Source of the DNA: Vicugna vicugna
Taxonomy: Eukaryota
Assembly: GCA_013265495.1 (NCBI GenBank)
Contig: MU057801.1
Location: 2,262,301-2,326,300 of the forward strand
Reading direction: 5' to 3'
DNA: 64,000 nucleotides
This document shows, in pieces, positions 18,531-33,500 of this stretch. The notes beneath the pieces were generated by a model that was not told the DNA's origin, ran no database searches, and was given only the letters and a program-made list of their open reading frames with translations. Position 1 is the first letter of the stretch. Each line of letters opens with the position of its first letter. The position numbers were made by a program, and so were the translations under genes.

Positions 18531-19099
18531 CCTGAAGGCTCCCCGCCCTCCCGCCTTCCTGCTGCTGCTCTGCTACCTCTCCGGGTTCAAGCCTTGTGTC
18601 TTCAACAGAACTTGAAGCTGAATAATGTCCTCTTAACCAGCCCTTCTGGGGCCGAAGAGGCTGTGGCTCTAGGCTGTCATTTAGTTCTGTCTCTCAGCCT
18701 CCTTCTCTGTAAGTAAAATCAGGAACACCTCCCCTAGAGTCACGAGAACGAAATGAAAAGCGATTATATAGGAAACAAGGAAACTTCAGAGCAGCAAGAC
18801 ACCCACCCCTGCAGGCATGCAGGTCAACCCTCGTTCTCACTGAGTGCTGCTGGGACTCGGAGTTCTGTACATTAAACCCAACGTCACCGTCTGGGGCTTT
18901 GTAAAGACACTGACTGCAGTGTCACTACCGACCCAGAGATGCTAGTTCACCGTTTCCACTTAGCCGGCAGCTAATTTTTTTTAATAATCCACACATTTCT
19001 CCCACTTAAGAGGAGGGTCGCCTACACTGAAGCGCCCACCCAGCTTCTAAATGCGTCCTGACACCGGAGCGCCCGGATTCTCAGGAAGGCAGGCAAAGG

Positions 19100-20396
19100 C
19101 GAGCCCCGGGGAGCCAGAAGGCGAGGGGACGCAGCACACCGCGGGGACGCGCAGCACCGGCAGACCTCACCTGCGCACGGGTCCCGCCGCTCCGCAAGGA
19201 GGCAGTCAGTCCCCCAGCCAGCGCTCTGAACTGTAAACTCTGTCCCCGAGTCCCCCGCCGGCGGGTCCCGTTCTGGTGAGCCTGCTGCTTTAAACAAGAA
19301 CCCTGCAGAAAGTCGGCCCAGGTTCCGTGAGCTGACACGCTCACGCGCGGGAGGAACCACAACCGCGCCCAGCGGGTACCCGGCACGCGGGGCGCAGCCC
19401 GGCCCCACCGCGCCTCCCCGCCAGCCGAGCGGCCCCTTCACCGGAACCGGCTTCCTGGGTCCCCGGGCGTCACCTCCAAGGGGCCGCACTGCAAACTGTA
19501 CAGGAGGGAGGACCCGGTACCGGGTCCGGTGCGGCTCGACGGGCTCGACCCGCTCCGCCCTGGCGCCACCTGCCGTGCGGACTCGCGGCCTCCGCCGGCC
19601 ACTCGTCCCGGTGACCGGGCTTCCGCGGCCGCCTACCGGCTGGAATCGGCGGATCGCAGGAGAACCGGGAACGCGAAGCAGGAGCCCACGCCCACACGGT
19701 CTTCTCCGGCCCAGGGGCTTCCGCGCAGCCGCGAGGCAGCCGCGCCCCCCAGCGCCGGGGGCGGGACCTACGAGGCTTTGCCCAATCAGAAGCCCCCTAG
19801 CCTCGGGCCGGCGTCTGTGACGCGGCTGGACCAATGAAGACTCGAGCGCGGGTTTGCTGTGGTCTTCTGGGAACGCGCCTCTCCCGGAAGCCACCTCCCA
19901 AGAGCCACACCTGGGCGACGCTAGCTTGTGATCTGCCGTCCCACCGGCTGTCAAAGCTGCCCGTCTGGGGCGGGGGCGGGACCAAGCGCTCGCGTCTGCG
20001 CGGAGCTGGCGGGCCGCGCGCGGGAACCCCCGGAGGAGCCGGCGAGACTCGCTCTGTCCCGGGAGGAGGGGGCGCGGCGGCGGGTGGCTTTCCCCAGGCC
20101 GCCTCGGGCGAGCGACGAGGGGCGCGGAGCCTCCGCGGGCCCGGCCCAACCGTCAGGGTTCTCCGTGGATCCGCGGCCCGCGTGACTGGAGCCGCCCACA
20201 CGACCCGGGTCATTTTCCCTAGGCGGACCGACCTGAGGCCCCCGCTGACCCGGATCATCTTCTCCTCGCTGACCCGTGGCCACTGGAACCGCCCACACTG
20301 ACCCGGGACTTCACGCCGACCTGGGGTCGGCCCGTTGACCGGAGTCATTACCCTCACGCTGACCAAGGCCGCGGCCCCGCCGTCATTCCCGCGCAG
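19100..20396 (+). promoter_or_regulatory. NXT1: NXT1 CpG-island promoter and presumed non-coding exon 1
   Basis: CpG-dense; GC box ~19758-19765, CCAAT at 19782-19786 and 19831-19835, ETS CCGGAAG at 19884-19890; no ATG from 19840 to 20396; first strong donor CAG|GTAGGT at 20396/20397; TSS not determinable. Confidence 0.75.
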
Positions 20397-20917
20397 GTAG
20401 GTGCACCGCACAGGTAGGTGCTCCCGCGCAGGTTAGGTGCCCCGCGCAGGTTAGGTGCCTCCGCGCAGGTTAGGTGCCCCCATGCAGGTAGGTGTCCCGC
20501 GCAGGTTAGGTGCCCCGCGCAGGTAGGTGCCCCGCGCAGGTTAGCTGCCCCAGGGCAGGTTAGGTGCCTCTGCGCAGGTAGGTGCCCCGCGCAGGTAGGT
20601 GCCCCACGCAGGTTAGGTGCCTCCGCGCAGGTTAGGTGCCCCCATGCAGGTAGGTGTCCCGCGCAGGTTAGGTGCCCCGCGCAGGTAGGTGCCCCGCGCA
20701 GGTTAGCTGCCCCAGGGCAGGTTAGGTGCCTCTGCGCAGGTAGGTGCCCCGCGCAGGTAGGTGCCCCGCGCAGGTTAGCTGCCCCAGCGCAGGTTAGGTG
20801 CCCCGCGCAGGGTAGGTGCCGCCCCCGCGCAGGGTAGGTGCCACCCCCGCGCAGGTAGGTGCTCCCGCGCAGGTTAGGTGCCCCTTTAAGGTTAGATGCC
20901 CCCGTGCAGGTAGGTGC
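20391..20917 (+). repeat. 17-22 bp minisatellite, ~29 units, consensus GCGCAGGT(T)AGGTGCCCC, with a 162-bp higher-order duplication
   Basis: units parsed by hand; 20444-20605 repeats as 20606-20767 with one mismatch; the ORF track shows the matching 54-aa repeat. Confidence 0.95.
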
Positions 20918-22596
20918 AGGCCCCCTGACCGCGGCTGCCCGCGCAGTGAGACGTCTCCTGGCCTCGAGGCAGGTCTTGGACGGGTCGAAGCGCCGCAGGA
21001 ACGGCCCCCTCCCTGCCGACTCCCAGACGGCGGCTGGTTGAGCTGCGTGGGTGGAGGCGGAGGACCGAGGTGCTGGGAAACCGCGCGGACGCCGGGTGGT
21101 GGGGAGCTCCGGTGAGGGAGACAGGGCCGCAGGGGGAAATTACAGACTAGTGGTCCGGACCGTGCGCGCACGGACTTGACCTCGGAAGAGCAGGAGCCAG
21201 TGAGAGGGTCACTCTGTTTTTGTAGACGGCAGATCCGGGCGGAGCCGACCCTGGACCCTCATCCACACTGCGTTTTCACTTCTCATTAGTGAAGTTGTTA
21301 CGGTAACATCCCCTCTTGGTGACCATTGAAGGACGCGGTGCCTGTAAATCGCTAGGAAAGTAGAGATCGGAGTGAGAGTGTGCAGGAGTTGGACTTGAGG
21401 TCCGCTGAGGAGCTGGCAGGGCCGGGTCCTCACCTGGCCCCGACCTCACACTCCTTTCTAGGACTCAGCTCCTGCCCAGCCTCTCCAGTTCTCCCCTAGA
21501 GGCACTGGCCTCCTAGTTCCTCAGCTCGTAGGAGAGCCCAACTCCTTCCCAGCCCTGCCTGCGATCCTTCATCCTTCCCATAAGCCGATTTTTTTTTAAA
21601 GCAAAGGTTTTTGAAATGAAAAAAAATTCAGTATTTAAGTCTGTAAATCTAAGCACATCCAGTATTTTAGTAATGTTGCCCTTTGTTGGATTTTTGTTTA
21701 GTGAAGTTTTAATCACACAAAAAGAATACAGCTATGACGGTTGTACCATATGCTGAAGAAAAACAAATAATAATATTTCTGTATGCTTCTGGACTTTTTT
21801 TTTAAGGAAATGTGATATTTGAGCTACAATTGAAATTCTTTTTTGCTGCCATCACCTCTTCACTCCCCACCCCATAGGACGTCTTCCATCTGACCTGTCT
21901 TCCATGGGCTCAGGGGACATCCCTGTGCTCCCAGAAGCTGCGCATCCTCCCTTCTCATCCCAGCCCGCTGCCAGCTTTGCTTCCTAGAGCCCCTCGTGGG
22001 GGTTGTGGCTCCACCTTGGTCCTGTCCTGCCCCTGTGGCATTTGTTTTCTTAAGCCGGCCTTCTCTTCGCCCTCCCAGTGCCTGTGGGTGCCCTCCCAGC
22101 AGGCCGTCACCAGATGATGAGCTGTGCCGTCTGGCCTGGATTGGGCCACTGTTCCTGCCCCGTGCTGCACTGTCTTTACCCGGGATAAACTGCTTCCCTT
22201 CTTCTCAGGGGCAGTCACACCTGTCCCAGGCCTACAGGAGAAAGTGGCATTCCATACTGTAGCTTATGAGATGAGATTGTGGAAATTCACAGTGACAGCT
22301 TCCATCTCTGGGCGTCAGGCTCTTTAACCGCGTGCGCGGCATGCAGTCTTGTGCCGCCTGCGCGGTGGTGCCCAAGTTGGGGTGGCCCGTGTAGCAGGAG
22401 CGACTGAGGCTGGGTGGGGCCTCGCATTGGCATCGGCACACACCTGGGTGGTCTCCCCACAGAGCAGCAGGATGTCCTTTGCAGGGCAGCATGCACGGTG
22501 ACATTCACACAGGCCTCTTCACCCTTCCTGCCCTGCAGCCCAGCGCCCTCGGGTGCAGGGAGCACCTGGGCGGAGGCCTCCTCCTGTGGACCAGAG

Positions 22597-23019
22597 ATGG
22601 CGTCCGTGGACTTCAAGACCTACGTGGACCAGGCCTGCCGCGCGGCGGAGGAGTTCGTGAACGTGTACTACAGCACTATGGACAAGCGGCGGCGCCTGCT
22701 GTCCCGCCTGTACTTGGGCACGGCCACCCTGGTGTGGAACGGGAACGCCGTCTCTGGACAGGAGTCCTTGAGTGAGTTTTTTGAGATGCTGCCTTCCAGC
22801 GAGTTCCAGATCAACGTGGTGGACTGCCAGCCCGTTCACGACGAAGCCACCCCGAGCCAGACCACCGTCCTTGTGGTGATCTGTGGGACGGTGAAATTCG
22901 AGGGCAACAAACAGCGGGACTTCAACCAGAACTTCATTCTGACCGCCCAGGCCTCGCCAGGCAACACGGTGTGGAAGATCGCCAGTGACTGCTTCCGCTT
23001 CCAGGACTGGGCGTGCTAG
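22597..23019 (+). CDS. NXT1: NTF2-related export protein 1 (p15), 140 aa, single coding exon
   Basis: [25 protein letters not shown]...[14 protein letters not shown] is the NXT1 NTF2-like fold; ATG 22597, TAG 23017-23019; likely acceptor cttcacccttcctgccctgcag ending at 22538. Confidence 0.98.
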
Positions 23020-23180
23020 TGGGGACAGGGCGACACCCCCAGCCTGCACTCTGCCCTCGCCCGAGTCCAGGGGCCCCTTTCTGGGCACGTGCGTGTTTGT
23101 CATAGATGCCTTTTCAAAATAGTAAGATTCTCTATTTTTCTACTTGCCCAGTAGAGACCCTGGTTCTGGAAATTCTGATG

Positions 23181-23186
23181 AATAAA
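23181..23186 (+). terminator. NXT1: NXT1 poly(A) signal AATAAA
   Basis: AATAAA ~160 nt after the stop, followed by a GT/T-rich tract. Confidence 0.8.
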
Positions 23187-26100
23187 ACAGTGAGTGTTGC
23201 TTCTTCCTCTCTCCTGGTGTGTCCGGGAGGTTGTGGGCGGGAGGAGGAGGTGTGCAGGCAGCAGTCCCAGCAGAAGGCATTGCAGACCGAGGCTGAGATC
23301 CAGGGTGGAGCACCTCGCGGAGGCCCAGGGGCGCCCCCGGGGGCACAGAGCCGGCTCACGGCCCCTCACACTGGAATCCCTCGAGGCACTCTGAAACACC
23401 AGGCCCCTACACCGACTGGCATGAGGGCGCCTGCCCCCTCCCCCCAGGCCAGAGCCGCTCCATCTGCTGCGTTATTAAAGGGAAACACCTGTGCCCGTGG
23501 TGATGGTTGACTGCAGGGCTGTGTGGGGCGGGCCCCGGCCGCCAGTTTCCCTGGTAACTGATGAGCCAACCTGATGTCAGTTCTCCTGTAAATGGGCGCC
23601 GCCTCCCCCCGCCGGCTGCGGCACACAGTGGAGTGTCCCTCTAGGACCTCGCGTCAGACATGTAAGCACCCCTGTCCACTAAGCCCCTGACATCGCAGTC
23701 ACTGCCTCCGGCCCCTGTGGTCCCTTGGCTGGGCATCCACAGGGCTTGCCGGCCTGCGGGGCACTGCCCAGCAGAGGCTGATTCGGCAGGAGCTGCTGCT
23801 GGACTTCAGGCTCAGAAGCCCCCTGTGAGGGGTGGGGTGGGATGCCCCCTTCTCATCTCGGGCCTGGGTGGGAGGCAAGTCCCACCAGGACTCGGCTCAG
23901 AGCGAAGTCCCTGGGGCCTGAAGGGCTGCCTAAGAAGCTTCAGGCCAGCAGCTGTGGGCGTCCCTGAGGGCAGGAGGGAAGTCAGAGTGCAGACCTCCAG
24001 GGGCTCCTCGTGTCCACCAGGCCCTCCTTCCGGACTAGAAGGAGGGTTTGCAGTCGGGAGAGCTGTCAGATGAAAGACCGCCTCCCCCAGACCACCGAGC
24101 TAGCCTGGCTCTGCGACTCCGACGGAGGAGGACAGGCTGGGCAGGGGAAAGACTTGGGGGAGCCAGCCTCTCTGTGCTCCTTGTCTTCTGTTATTTGGAA
24201 AGCAGGTGAGAGGGTAGATGTTCTGGCAGCCCTTTTGGGCTGTGAGCCCCATTGGGCCACATGAAAGGGACGGAGGAAAGGAAAGCAGGTCAACCTCAGG
24301 GAGTCCCCACCAGCCTTTGGTGACCACCCTCACCCCCAGCTTCTCTCAGGGGAGTAAGAAGCACGTCCACCTGACTGAAGCCGCTGCTGTCTGGGGGCCT
24401 GTTTACAATCAGTGCCAAGATGGAGGAAAGAGTGTGAAACAGGACAGGACTCTCTCCTTCCTGTGTAAGGCGCCCTTACACACCAGTGGGAGAAATCAGA
24501 CAAAAAGGGCAACAGAACAAGAAAATGGGAAACCACAAAAATATGCATGGAGGTGGAGCGGGAGAAAGGGAGGCGACGCGGCACTAGCGAGTCACGGTAG
24601 TGGAAGCAGGCGCGGTGTTAGCCGTGGACACGGGCCTCCAGCTGTTACCCACCAGGGTCCCTGGACTCCTTAGTCAATAGAAGTTGACAAGAGGCCGGGC
24701 GAGGGATTCAGGCGAGGCTTTCCTGGGGCCCATGCCGCACAGACGGAGCGAGAACAAGTGACAGGCGCCCCTGCTCGCTCCCCGGGGTCAGGGGCAAGTG
24801 AGCTGGTCCTTAAATGGGGGCGGGTGGGGACAGGTCCAGGGCTCGTGCGGGAGGGGTGGCTCAGGTGGTCGGCACCACCAAGGGGTGCGCAGGGATCACG
24901 CCCAGCACCACACAAGTGGCAGTTGGGTTCTTGGTCTTCCTGCATCTTGTTCACAGTGGGCCCCAGCTGCACATGCACGCAGTTATTTTTAGTCCCTTGT
25001 AGTTCCTTTGTGTTCTGTTTCTCCAGGGGAGTCTGTCCAGGTGCGGGCCCTGCAGCCAGGGGTCCCGGGTCCCAGCCTGTCTCACATCCAGTCCTCCCCG
25101 GTGGGTATCATCTAACTGATGGCAGAAGGTACCATCGCCCAGCAGACTGGCCAAGGCCAGGAAACCCCAATCTCCCCAGCAGATTGGGACCTCGGGGGCA
25201 ACTGGTCTGCACGATGGGAGATGGTGGGAAGTGGGGTCGGGCATTTGGGGGAGCAATTTCCTGGGAGAAAGCGGGGAAGGGGTGAGGTGCCCCCAGCAGG
25301 GGAGGGGGTGAGATGCCGCGTCCCTGCCTCTAGCCCAGAGAGAAGGGGCGTTAACAGGATCTGCTGAGCCTGACGGGCCCCCACTGGACACAGCCTGCAG
25401 GGACCACTGTCCCCGGGCTGTGCGTCCCCGGGGCAGGCTGGGCAGGGTGGGTCCTGCTGCCGTGTCGGGAGGGCTCCCACTCCCTATGACAGAGCAGAGG
25501 GGCCTGACCCCAGGGACCAGATGGAGAGTTGCGGGACAGAGGACTGCTGTACCGGGGCAGCTTGTGCTTAGGGGAAGCCCGGGTTGGTTTCCTGGGCTGA
25601 GACGCAGGCCTGAGTGAGGAGCCTGGCCTGAGGGGTCTCTTGGGTGCTGGGTGACTGGGCCCCTGGGAGAGGCTGAGAAGCAGGTGGACAGATTCTCAAG
25701 GGCTCCTGGAGCTGCTCAGGGAGCGAGAGCCCCCCAGAGCAAGAGGTCTTGTTCTAAAGCCGGAAGATCTCAGCAGTGTTGGGGCCTCAGAAAGCCCACT
25801 CAGGTGGCCCAGGAGAGAAGGCCCCAGGTTGAGGGACAGCCAACTCCTCCCCTCCAAAGGCTCACGGCTAAGAAACTCGGGTGACAGAGGGCGCAGGGGC
25901 CAGGAGGGCGCCGGCCCGGCTGAGGGGTCCAGGCATTCAGCCTCCCCTCGGCGTGCGGGGCTCTGGGGGATGTGGGTGAATGCAGGCCTTTCCCGTCTGC
26001 CAGTGAGCGCCAGGCGTCAGCAGGGCACCCTCGAAGAGCTCATCAGACAGCACTTGATCTGTGGGTCGCTGCCTGGCGGACCGACCGCCCTGGTCTGCCC

Positions 26101-31999: not shown

Positions 32000-33500
32000 G
32001 TTTAATACGACGACTGAGCAGAGGATCTGCCTCGTTTCTGGACCGGAAGATACGGGGTGGGATACACGAGTGACAGGTCCGCGAACCGCGAGTGTGCCTG
32101 GGTCTGCTGGACATCTGGGAGAAATGGGGACAAACGGACGCTCCGAGCTGCGATGTCAACCCTCCAGGCTGCGACGACGCGTTCCCAACTCGGACGCGAG
32201 CGAGGCCTCCGCCGGTGCCCGGCGGTCACCGACGGCGCGCACACACCCGGAAACGGCGGCTCCAGCCCGAAGCTCGCAGGATCTCTGAGCACATACGGCT
32301 CCGGCTCCGCTCTTAACTGCCCGCTTGCCGCGTACCGACACCGCACCACGCCGCTCCAGCTCAGCCCACCGCTGCCTGCGGCACGTGGCAGCGCCCCGCC
32401 CACCTCCGGGGCCGCCCCCCACTTCCGGGGACCCGCCTGCCCACTTCTGCCCCGCCCGCTCACTTCCGGGTGCCCGCCCCGCCCTCTCCCAGGGGCCGCC
32501 CACCCGCTGTCCTGCCCTCGGGTAGAGGCTGGGGAGGAGCCAGTACGTGACCGCGCGCCCGGTAGGTCACGCGCCTTCCTCGGGGGGCTCCCACCCTGCC
32601 CACTCCGCGTTGCGAGAGGCGCCGAGTCGGAGTCGCAGTTTCCCACGCAGGCGCAGACTTGGCTCGCTATGGGTGACGCAATTTGCGCAGTCGGTCCAAC
32701 GCACGGCCGCAGCGTGCGACGGATCACGTAACTTCCCTGCCTCCGCAGTCGGACGTGCGCGCGCAGGACAGCCCACCGACAGGGGGCGGGGCCAGGCTCG
32801 CAGCAACCAATCAGCGTCCCCCTCTCCGCGCCGCCCCGCCCCTGTCCGTCCGTCGGTCCCAGGGCCTGGTCCTCGGAAGCGCGGTGGCGGCGGCCGGGTG
32901 GTGGGTGCGCGGCCCGCGGGGCGGGGGGCGCGGAGGGCCGGCGGCGGGCGCTGCCTGGGCTCCGATTCGGCCGGGAGGCCTCCGGGGAGTCGGGGCTGGG
33001 CCGGGCCGGCCGGCGGGCGTGGGGAGAGGAGGCCACCTGCGGCCATTTCCCCGCCGGCCGCGGGCGCTGTCCTCCGGCCGGCGGCCTCTGAGGGGCTGGC
33101 CGGGCAGGTGAGGCTGGCCTCCGGGCCGCGGGCCGCGCGGGGGCGGGGCGGGGGCGGGGCCNNNNNNNNNNNNNNNNNNNNNNNNNNNNNNNNNNNNNNN
33201 NNNNNNNNNNNNNNNNNNNNNNNNNNNNNNNNNNNNNNNNNNNNNNTGCGGGAGCGCCGCGGGGAGCGTCTGCGCCGGGTCCGGACCGGCCGGCGGGAGG
33301 GCGGCGCGGTGCGCGGGGACCCGGCCGCTCCCGTGACCTTGTCAGCGCGCCCGTGAAGCGGCGGGGCAGCCCCAGGACGGCCTGTCAGCCGCCCGCACGG
33401 AGCCGCCTGCCGTTCGGAGGGGCCCAGGTCTCCGCTCGGGGGACACGGGCCGCAGCGCGGCCCGGGGAACGGTGACCCCGGGTAGGAGGGGTTTCGGGGT
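32000..33500 (+). promoter_or_regulatory. GZF1: GZF1 CpG-island promoter / non-coding exon 1
   Basis: CpG-dense; ACTTCCGG ETS sites at 32421 and 32462, TGACGCAAT 32674-32682, GC box 32783-32792, CCAAT 32807-32811; candidate donor CAG|GTGAGG at 33107/33108. Confidence 0.75.
33162..33246. other. assembly gap (85 N)
   Basis: run of N inside the CpG island. Confidence 0.97.

What the first reader, a model, noticed from the sequence alone, without database searches (positions are those of the whole stretch)
20391..20917. Minisatellite made of the NXT1 exon-1 splice donor: a tandem array of 5' splice sites
Seen: the array starts exactly at the first strong donor closing the CpG island (gcgcag|GTAGGT, 20396/20397) and repeats it about 29 times. 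Twelve units keep CAG|GTAGGT (GT at 20397, 20414, 20488, 20523, 20578, 20595, 20650, 20685, 20740, 20757, 20855, 20910). Eleven read CAG|GTTAGG, three CAG|GTTAGC, two CAGGGTAGGT and one AAGGTTAGAT. Established: CAG|GTAGGT is a good U1 snRNA match, and promoter-proximal U1 sites affect splice choice and premature polyadenylation. Inference: the array gives a ladder of alternative 5'UTR lengths, or a U1-loading platform whose strength scales with copy number. The exon-1 assignment rests on my recollection of the two-exon NXT1 structure.
Basis: partly seen in the sequence, partly recalled or inferred. Interest (0 to 1): 0.75.

Follow-up and report, generated by a model that had tools for sequence, protein, structure and literature searches.

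The report
NXT1 splice-donor minisatellite, first copy used
A 530-base tandem repeat in this camelid genome copies the splice donor of NXT1's first exon 29 times, but RNA contigs show splicing only from the first copy, as in the few known cases of this kind (human F7, IFI6, CBS), so it is a real but largely ordinary new example.

Summary
A 17-19 bp minisatellite of 29 units lies at 20391-20917: 12 units read CAG|GTAGGT, 11 GTTAGG, 3 GTTAGC, 2 CAGGGTAGGT and 1 AAGGTTAGA. Shuffles expect 0.5 copies of the 9-mer in the whole window.

RNA contigs from three runs, three studies and both camelid tribes join 20396|22539 (GT..AG). No contig joins from a later unit, but contigs drop rare forms, so minor use is not excluded.

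The array is not a mis-assembly. Four other camelid assemblies carry it at 376-633 bp. Porpoise and baleen whales carry about 17 decayed units at the same place. Hippo has about 3 units, and cattle and sheep have one intact plus about 3 decayed. Rhino, mustelids and a sea lion have one donor.

Minisatellites whose first monomer spans an exon-intron boundary are already described (F7 IVS7, IFI6, CBS, LMNB2, PDGF; PMC1557585). There the most upstream site wins ("oriented scanning").

The "ladder of 5'UTRs" is not seen. The "U1 platform" is untested, and there is no cryptic poly(A) hexamer in intron 1 for it to suppress.

Verdict: new member of a known kind, modest interest. The scan also noted a FAM20C donor minisatellite in this genome.

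The parts
19000..21400 (.). CpG island of the NXT1 promoter; the array lies inside it
   Evidence: GC 0.67-0.80 and CpG o/e 0.62-1.01 in 200-bp windows
20008..20396 (+). NXT1 exon 1 (non-coding); some transcripts start further upstream, at or before 19946
   Evidence: RNA contigs cover 20008/20022-20396. In run X4 a loose end TTTCTTATATGGG abuts 20008; from my own knowledge this is the 10x 5' template-switch tag, which marks a capped 5' end. Another contig starts at 19946
20394..20402 (+). Authentic 5' splice site CAG|GTAGGT (cut 20396/20397); it is the first unit of the array
   Evidence: Joint 20392>22535 with '+4 cut' gives GT..AG in X37, X4 and X10. U1 duplex -12.9 kcal/mol against -14.0 for the consensus
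20391..20917 (+). Minisatellite of 29 units of 17-22 bp (consensus CCGCGCAG|GT(T)AGGTGCC): one real donor and 28 pseudo-donors in intron 1
   Evidence: TRF; unit list
20450..20611 (+). 9-unit (162-bp) higher-order block, first copy
   Evidence: Matches 20612-20773 except at one base, 20606 A against G. It is present once in the close relative L005, so it is a very recent duplication
20612..20773 (+). 9-unit (162-bp) higher-order block, second copy
20397..22538 (+). Intron 1 (2142 nt)
   Evidence: Joint skips 2142 nt, GT..AG. Low-depth unspliced contigs in X37 cover 20686-21491 and 21710-22564
22539..23205 (+). NXT1 exon 2 (58-nt 5'UTR, CDS, 3'UTR); the 3' end is inferred from the poly(A) signal
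   Evidence: Acceptor ccttcctgccctgcag|CCC; joint; AATAAA at 23181
22597..23019 (+). NXT1 coding sequence, 140 aa plus stop
   Evidence: ORF; Pfam NTF2, 104 bits; 92-99% identical to mammalian NXT1 proteins

Best explanation
This is a boundary-spanning minisatellite. A 17-19 bp segment containing the NXT1 exon-1 splice donor (CCGCGCAG|GTAGGTGCC) was duplicated in tandem by slippage or unequal exchange. The authentic donor is now followed, inside intron 1, by 28 reiterated pseudo-donors, 11 of which match its 9-mer exactly. The spliceosome uses the most upstream copy, and the rest are removed with the intron. The mature mRNA therefore has one 5'UTR (about 447 nt, no upstream ATG) whatever the copy number. 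The choice cannot come from motif strength, because the copies are identical. It follows position, as shown experimentally for the human F7 IVS7 minisatellite ('oriented 5'-to-3' scanning'). The array itself behaves as an evolving VNTR. It expanded and is still turning over in camelids. It expanded once and then froze in cetaceans, and it is short or decayed in hippo and ruminants. Shown: the array, the donor used, the acceptor and the distribution across lineages. Inferred: the scanning mechanism, neutrality, and a likely side effect as spare donors (loss of site 1 would shift splicing 17 nt downstream with no coding consequence).
For: Array and unit counts. RNA: the joint 20396|22539 appears in X37 (same organism as the window, 99+% alike, depth 109), X4 (depth 4460) and X10 (depth 49). 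No other joint is seen, and coverage stops at 20392/20396. X4's variants match the Camelus-type loci L003/L004 at every listed site, so the first donor is used in both camelid tribes even though their arrays differ. The identical 9-mer recurs 11 more times with the same U1 duplex energy of -12.9 to -13.7 kcal/mol, so strength cannot explain the choice. The array RNA folds no better than shuffles (z +2.47), so masking by structure is not indicated. Copy number is 376, 428, 429, 528 and 633 bp in five assemblies, with conserved edge units and a variable interior, plus a 162-bp block duplicated with one mismatch. The orthologous array is present in porpoise and five baleen-whale loci. Hippo has about 3 units and cattle and sheep have one intact plus about 3 decayed. 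Rhino, mustelids and a sea lion have a single donor. Precedent and mechanism: PMC1557585.
Against: The RNA evidence is from assembled contigs, which discard rare variants. Use of the second or third site at a few percent, as reported for IFI6 and CBS, would be invisible. No raw junction reads were examined. No RNA was examined in cetaceans. Neutrality is inferred only. The 5'ss core is somewhat better kept than the spacer in the old cetacean array (0.82-1.0 against 0.59-0.82 majority fraction). I attribute that to CpG decay of the spacer, but it could reflect constraint.
Confidence: 0.78

Rival explanations
1. Ladder of alternative donors: several units are used at appreciable levels. This would give NXT1 mRNAs whose 5'UTRs differ by multiples of 17-19 nt; donors beyond 20482 would also add upstream ATGs.
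For: Eleven more sites are identical to the used donor and have the same U1 duplex energy. In IFI6 and CBS the two nearest pseudo-sites are used alongside the authentic one (PMC1557585). ATGs lie in the array at 20482, 20644 and 20896.
Against: In three runs, with depth up to 4460, the only assembled joint is from the first unit. No contig links any later unit to 22539. Array sequence in RNA is continuous with the downstream intron at about 5% of exon depth, which is unspliced RNA. In F7, LMNB2 and PDGF only the first site is used.
Confidence: 0.12
2. U1-loading platform: the pseudo-donors recruit many U1 snRNPs close to the promoter. This would boost transcription or protect the nascent RNA from premature cleavage and polyadenylation, with an effect that scales with copy number.
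For: There are 14 units at -10.8 kcal/mol or better and 11 more at -8.8 in a bulged register, against a mean of -2.8 for other GTs in the intron. The array begins 389 nt from the start site, inside the CpG island. The array has persisted in cetaceans since before the toothed/baleen split. From my own knowledge, promoter-proximal 5' splice sites and U1 telescripting are established phenomena (Kaida 2010; Almada 2013; Damgaard 2008).
Against: There is no AATAAA or ATTAAA on the sense strand anywhere in exon 1 or intron 1, so no obvious cryptic site needs suppressing. Copy number ranges from 1 (rhino, carnivores) and about 3-4 (hippo, ruminants) to 35 for a conserved housekeeping gene, and it differs between close relatives. 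Many units carry changes that weaken the site, such as GTTAGC, ATCGGT, GTTTGG and GTCGGT. No occupancy or expression data exist.
Confidence: 0.08
3. Assembly artefact: the array or its length comes from mis-assembly of a GC-rich repeat.
For: An old short-read camelid assembly (L001) has a 374-N gap at this place. Short-read contigs of RNA run X37 fail to cover 20393-20685.
Against: Four other chromosome-level camelid assemblies carry the array at the same place with the same edge units. DNA-type runs X15, X16, X18 and X36 hold 0.74-0.86 of the sampled 31-mers of 20000-20930. Cetacean genomes carry the orthologous array. The exact copy number of this individual has not been independently checked.
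Confidence: 0.02

Closest known systems
Human F7 intron 7 (IVS7) 37-bp VNTR (Borensztajn et al. 2006, PMC1557585)
   Same: The first monomer of the minisatellite spans the exon-intron boundary, so the authentic donor is followed by identical pseudo-donors. Only the most upstream is used, and copy number varies.
   Different: F7 has 37-bp units in 5-9 copies at an internal coding exon, with a weak donor (UGG|gugggu). NXT1 has 17-19 bp units in 29 copies (19-35 across camelids), at a non-coding first exon inside a CpG island, with a strong donor. The F7 mechanism was shown by 50 mutant constructs; here it is inferred.
Human IFI6 (interferon-inducible 6-16) intron 2 minisatellite and CBS intron 13 VNTR (as summarised in PMC1557585)
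   Same: These are many short boundary-spanning repeats that reiterate the donor: 25 pseudo-sites in 6-16 and 15-20 repeats in CBS. That is comparable in number to the NXT1 array.
   Different: In both, the two nearest pseudo-sites are used constitutively alongside the authentic site and change the coding sequence. For NXT1 no such use is seen in contigs, and any use would only lengthen the 5'UTR.
LMNB2 and PDGF intron 4 minisatellites (as summarised in PMC1557585)
   Same: The arrays span the boundary, and only the authentic, most upstream donor is used.
   Different: Their units are much longer (100 bp and 81 bp), with 10-18 copies.
Recursive splice sites / ratchet points ((Y)nNCAG|GTAAGT)
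   Same: Each unit reads ...CCCCGCGCAG|GTAGGT, so a CAG sits directly before a 5' splice site. Removing whole units would regenerate the same junction and leave no trace in the mRNA.
   Different: The upstream pyrimidine content is 0.41-0.59, against 0.82 at the true acceptor. The intron is only 2.1 kb, whereas recursive splicing is known from very long introns (my own knowledge). No evidence of use.

Membership tests
Boundary-spanning minisatellites that reiterate a 5' splice site (F7 IVS7, IFI6, CBS, LMNB2, PDGF) | Head-to-tail tandem array with a minisatellite-sized unit (about 10-100 bp) | tested here: met
   TRF finds an array at 20388-20917. The basic unit is 17-19 bp in 29 copies, with higher-order periods of 72, 90 and 162
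Boundary-spanning minisatellites that reiterate a 5' splice site (F7 IVS7, IFI6, CBS, LMNB2, PDGF) | The first monomer contains the authentic exon-intron junction | tested here: met
   RNA contigs of three runs join 20396|22539, and 20394-20402 is the first CAG|GTAGGT of the array
Boundary-spanning minisatellites that reiterate a 5' splice site (F7 IVS7, IFI6, CBS, LMNB2, PDGF) | [quoted passage not shown] | tested here: met
   There are 11 further exact CAGGTAGGT copies with equal U1 duplex energy
Boundary-spanning minisatellites that reiterate a 5' splice site (F7 IVS7, IFI6, CBS, LMNB2, PDGF) | Pseudo-sites are silent, or only the nearest one or two are used | tested here: inconclusive
   Only the first-site joint is assembled in X37, X4 and X10. 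Contigs cannot show minor forms, and no raw reads were examined
Boundary-spanning minisatellites that reiterate a 5' splice site (F7 IVS7, IFI6, CBS, LMNB2, PDGF) | Copy number is variable (VNTR) | tested here: met
   The array is 376, 428, 429, 528 and 633 bp in five camelid assemblies. The window and L005 are 99% identical in the flanks yet differ by about 5 units and a 162-bp duplication. Variation within one population was not tested
Boundary-spanning minisatellites that reiterate a 5' splice site (F7 IVS7, IFI6, CBS, LMNB2, PDGF) | Pseudo-sites become active when the upstream sites are inactivated (oriented scanning) | not testable with these tools
   This needs minigene mutagenesis, as was done for F7 (PMC1557585)
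U1 telescripting / promoter-proximal U1 platform | Sites with strong complementarity to the U1 snRNA 5' end | tested here: met
   RNA duplex energies are -12.9/-13.7 (12 units), -10.8 (2), -8.8 (11), -7.1 (3) and -5.6 (1) kcal/mol, against -14.0 for the consensus
U1 telescripting / promoter-proximal U1 platform | A cryptic poly(A) signal nearby whose use U1 must suppress | tested here: not met
   There is no AATAAA or ATTAAA on the + strand from 20008 to the true signal at 23181. Weaker hexamer variants were not scanned
U1 telescripting / promoter-proximal U1 platform | U1 occupancy and an effect on transcript output | not testable with these tools
   This needs CLIP or antisense capture, and reporters with varied copy number
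Recursive splice sites | A functional 3' splice site (pyrimidine tract plus CAG) directly before a 5' splice site, in a long intron | tested here: not met
   The pyrimidine fraction in -20..-4 is 0.41-0.59 in the units, against 0.82 at the true acceptor. The intron is 2142 nt

The most novel reading that the evidence does not exclude
The array is not neutral. It would be a selected, copy-number-tunable cluster of U1-binding or spare-donor sites at the first exon of an essential mRNA-export cofactor. Kept for tens of millions of years in cetaceans and expanded independently in camelids, it would raise or stabilise NXT1 output or make exon-1 splicing robust to mutation. Because exon 1 has no upstream 3' splice site, it would also be a natural test of whether 'oriented scanning' for the 5' splice site starts from the cap.
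Probability: 0.1. Interest if true: 0.6.

Novelty: new member of a known kind. Interest (0 to 1): 0.3.

Why it matters
This adds a natural and unusually large example to the handful of genes in which identical 5' splice sites compete in tandem: 12 identical strong donors within 530 nt. It is at a first exon, where exon definition from an upstream 3' splice site cannot operate. It also comes as an evolutionary series of 1, about 3, about 17 and 19-35 copies across mammals. That makes it a convenient ready-made allelic series for testing how the spliceosome picks the most upstream of identical sites, and whether promoter-proximal U1 sites affect output. For annotating the genome, it fixes the NXT1 exon-1 end at 20396 and warns that gene predictors may pick any of the 12 identical donors.

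Tried and rejected
1. RNA structure masking the later donors. The fold of 20300-20960 is less stable than 20 shuffles (z +2.47), so I rejected this.

2. Recursive splicing within the array. The pyrimidine tracts are weak and the intron is short, so I rejected it as unlikely.

3. Telescripting target. No canonical poly(A) hexamer lies in exon 1 or intron 1.

4. Selection on the 5'ss core. The per-position majority fractions in camelid and cetacean arrays are confounded by the T insertion in camelids. In cetaceans they are confounded by CpG decay of the spacer. This was not informative.

5. Spliced transcripts through the protein index.
- The 140-aa protein is indexed only on five genome assemblies.
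- The Logan contigs found for cattle and porpoise (L007, L009, L010) are colinear with the genome, that is unspliced.
- The N-terminally extended proteins in the hit list come from other species' intron ATGs.

6. Hippo isoform X2 (P0138) was not on record; isoform X1 worked.

7. Pig was not reached, because no pig protein id was available.

8. The literature search for NXT1 together with minisatellite or VNTR listed no paper that mentions NXT1 among the 10 shown.

9. MaxEntScan could not be run, as no model files were available. I used U1 duplex energies instead.

Full report
**1. What is there.** Positions 20388-20917 are one tandem array. TRF gives periods of 72, 90 and 162 with 83-90% matches.
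- Cutting the array at each junction gives 29 units of 17-22 bp, with consensus CCGCGCAG|GT(T)AGGTGCC.
- All 12 CAGGTAGGT copies in the 64-kb window lie here. Shuffles expect 0.51, with a maximum of 4.
- A nine-unit, 162-bp block (20450-20611) is repeated at 20612-20773 with one difference.

**2. Gene context.**
- The ORF at 22597-23019 encodes a 140-aa NTF2-domain protein (Pfam PF02136, E 7e-30). It is 92-99% identical to mammalian NXT1.
- The array lies 1.7-2.2 kb upstream of the ATG, inside a CpG island that spans about 19000-21400. So it does not 'close' the island.

**3. RNA evidence**.
- Contigs of three runs from three studies (X37, X4, X10) contain the joint 20392>22535. Shifted by the 4 ambiguous bases (GCAG on both sides), this is 20396|22539 with GT..AG.
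- Depths of the joint contigs are 109, 4460 and 49.
- Exon-1 coverage begins at 20008-20022. In X4 a 13-nt loose end, TTTCTTATATGGG, abuts 20008. From my own knowledge this is the 10x 5' template-switch tag, so it marks a capped end. Another X4 contig starts at 19946.
- Coverage stops at the donor. X37 also has contigs at 4-6x over 20686-21491 and 21710-22564. These run on through the intron and across the acceptor, so they are unspliced RNA.
- No contig joins any later unit to exon 2.
- Caveat: contigs drop rare variants, so this shows the dominant form only.

**4. Which organisms.**
- X37 matches the window at 99% or more.
- X4's differences in exon 1 (nine substitutions and a CTGA insertion) are exactly those of loci L003/L004.
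- L002-L004 are about 93.5% identical to the window. L005 is 99% identical.
- From my recollection of the accession numbers, L002-L004 are Camelus assemblies, and the window and L005 are lamine camelids.
- So the first donor is used in both camelid tribes, although the arrays differ.

**5. Not an artefact; evolution.**

| Lineage (locus) | State of the array |
|---|---|
| Window | 528 bp |
| Four other chromosome-level camelid assemblies (L002-L005) | 376, 428, 429 and 633 bp at the same place |
| Older short-read camelid assembly (L001) | gap of N at this place |
| Finless porpoise (L008:3093-3430) | about 17 degenerate units |
| Five baleen-whale loci (L012-L016) | about 17 units, colinear with the porpoise |
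| Hippopotamus | about 3 units |
| Cattle and sheep | one intact unit plus about 3 decayed |
| Black rhinoceros, mustelids, a sea lion | a single donor (GCGCAG|GTAGGG or GCGAAG|GTA[A/G]GT) |

- Across the camelid arrays, the first two and last five or so units are shared and the interior differs.
- DNA-type runs hold 0.74-0.86 of the 31-mers of 20000-20930.
- A short array therefore probably existed early in Cetartiodactyla; pig was not examined.
- Large expansions happened separately in the cetacean stem, where the array then froze, and in camelids, where it is still turning over.

**6. Site strength and structure.**
- Duplex energies with the U1 5' end (AUACUUACCUG, established sequence) are -12.9 or -13.7 kcal/mol for the 12 GTAGGT units, including the used one.
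- The other units give -10.8 (two), -8.8 in a bulged register (11 GTTAGG units), -7.1 (three) and -5.6 (one).
- The consensus gives -14.0, and the other 91 GTs of the intron average -2.8.
- So 11 silent sites are as good as the used one. Strength cannot explain the choice.
- The array RNA is no more structured than shuffles (z +2.47).

**7. Comparison with what is known.** PMC1557585 (Borensztajn et al. [quoted passage not shown]
- F7 IVS7 has 37-bp units in 5-9 copies, and only the most upstream site is used. Mutagenesis shows that the pseudo-sites are functional but never compete. The authors call this 5'-to-3' oriented scanning.
- IFI6/6-16 has 25 pseudo-sites and CBS has 15-20 repeats. In both, the two nearest pseudo-sites are also used.
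- In LMNB2 and PDGF only the authentic site is used.
- NXT1 meets the defining features that I could test (section on membership).
- It differs in three ways. It sits at a non-coding first exon within a CpG island. It has short units and many copies. It comes with a phylogenetic copy-number series.

**8.
- The ladder is not seen at contig level.
- If later sites were used, units up to 20482 would add no ATG to the 447-nt ATG-free 5'UTR. Sites beyond that would add upstream ATGs at 20482, 20644 and 20896.
- The U1-platform idea has the motif but lacks an obvious target: no AATAAA or ATTAAA lies on the sense strand before the true signal at 23181.
- Copy number ranges from 1 to 35 across mammals for a conserved housekeeping gene. 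That argues against a dose-critical role.

**9. Verdict.**
- It is a new member of a known kind and is most likely a neutral VNTR whose first copy is the donor.
- Confidence in this reading is 0.78.
- The open point is low-level use of units 2-3, which needs raw junction reads.
- The scan's index also lists a second reading of this same stretch (s1-246792). It also lists a FAM20C exon-5 donor minisatellite elsewhere in this genome (s1-217015, not checked here).

Noticed in passing
window 20180-20390 (also L019:4923-4973 and L021:2226-2323): The 3' half of NXT1 exon 1 looks like an old, decayed tandem repeat of a roughly 19-26 nt unit containing GCTGACC(C/G)G. TRF calls it in hippo (period 25/26) and sea lion (periods 19/23) but not in the window. 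The splice-donor minisatellite may be the youngest layer of a repeat-prone region.
   Followed up: partly
window 22414-22596: The NXT1 reading frame stays open for 61 codons upstream of the ATG, across the acceptor into intron 1. The same feature in other species explains the N-terminally extended 'isoform X1' predictions (cattle 208 aa, porpoise 222 aa). These sit on contigs colinear with the genome, that is unspliced. They are probably annotation artefacts of intron retention.
   Followed up: partly
window 20008: A contig in run X4 carries the loose end TTTCTTATATGGG directly before 20008. From my own knowledge this is the 10x 5' template-switch tag. It gives a base-precise cap site for NXT1 in Camelus. 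GC boxes and two CCAAT boxes lie at 19781-19981.
   Followed up: partly
window 33162-33246: A run of 85 N (gap or masked).
   Followed up: no
L024:2-1382 and L027:1186-1374 (by my recollection of the accession, L024 is a dog assembly; L027 not identified): A separate large minisatellite lies about 3.6-5 kb upstream of the NXT1 ATG. It has a 50/101-bp unit, with 27 copies in one assembly and 3.7 in the other. It is unrelated in sequence to the camelid array, and is another VNTR at this locus in another lineage.
   Followed up: no
same genome, another piece (scan note s1-217015): The scan's index lists a first-reader note of a minisatellite built from the FAM20C exon-5 splice donor in this genome. 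If it is real, boundary-spanning donor minisatellites recur in this genome. That one would be in coding sequence.
   Followed up: no
L018:31343-34493: A C2H2 zinc-finger gene lies directly downstream of NXT1 in sheep. From memory of the human locus this is consistent with the NXT1-GZF1 neighbourhood. I did not check it in the window.
   Followed up: no
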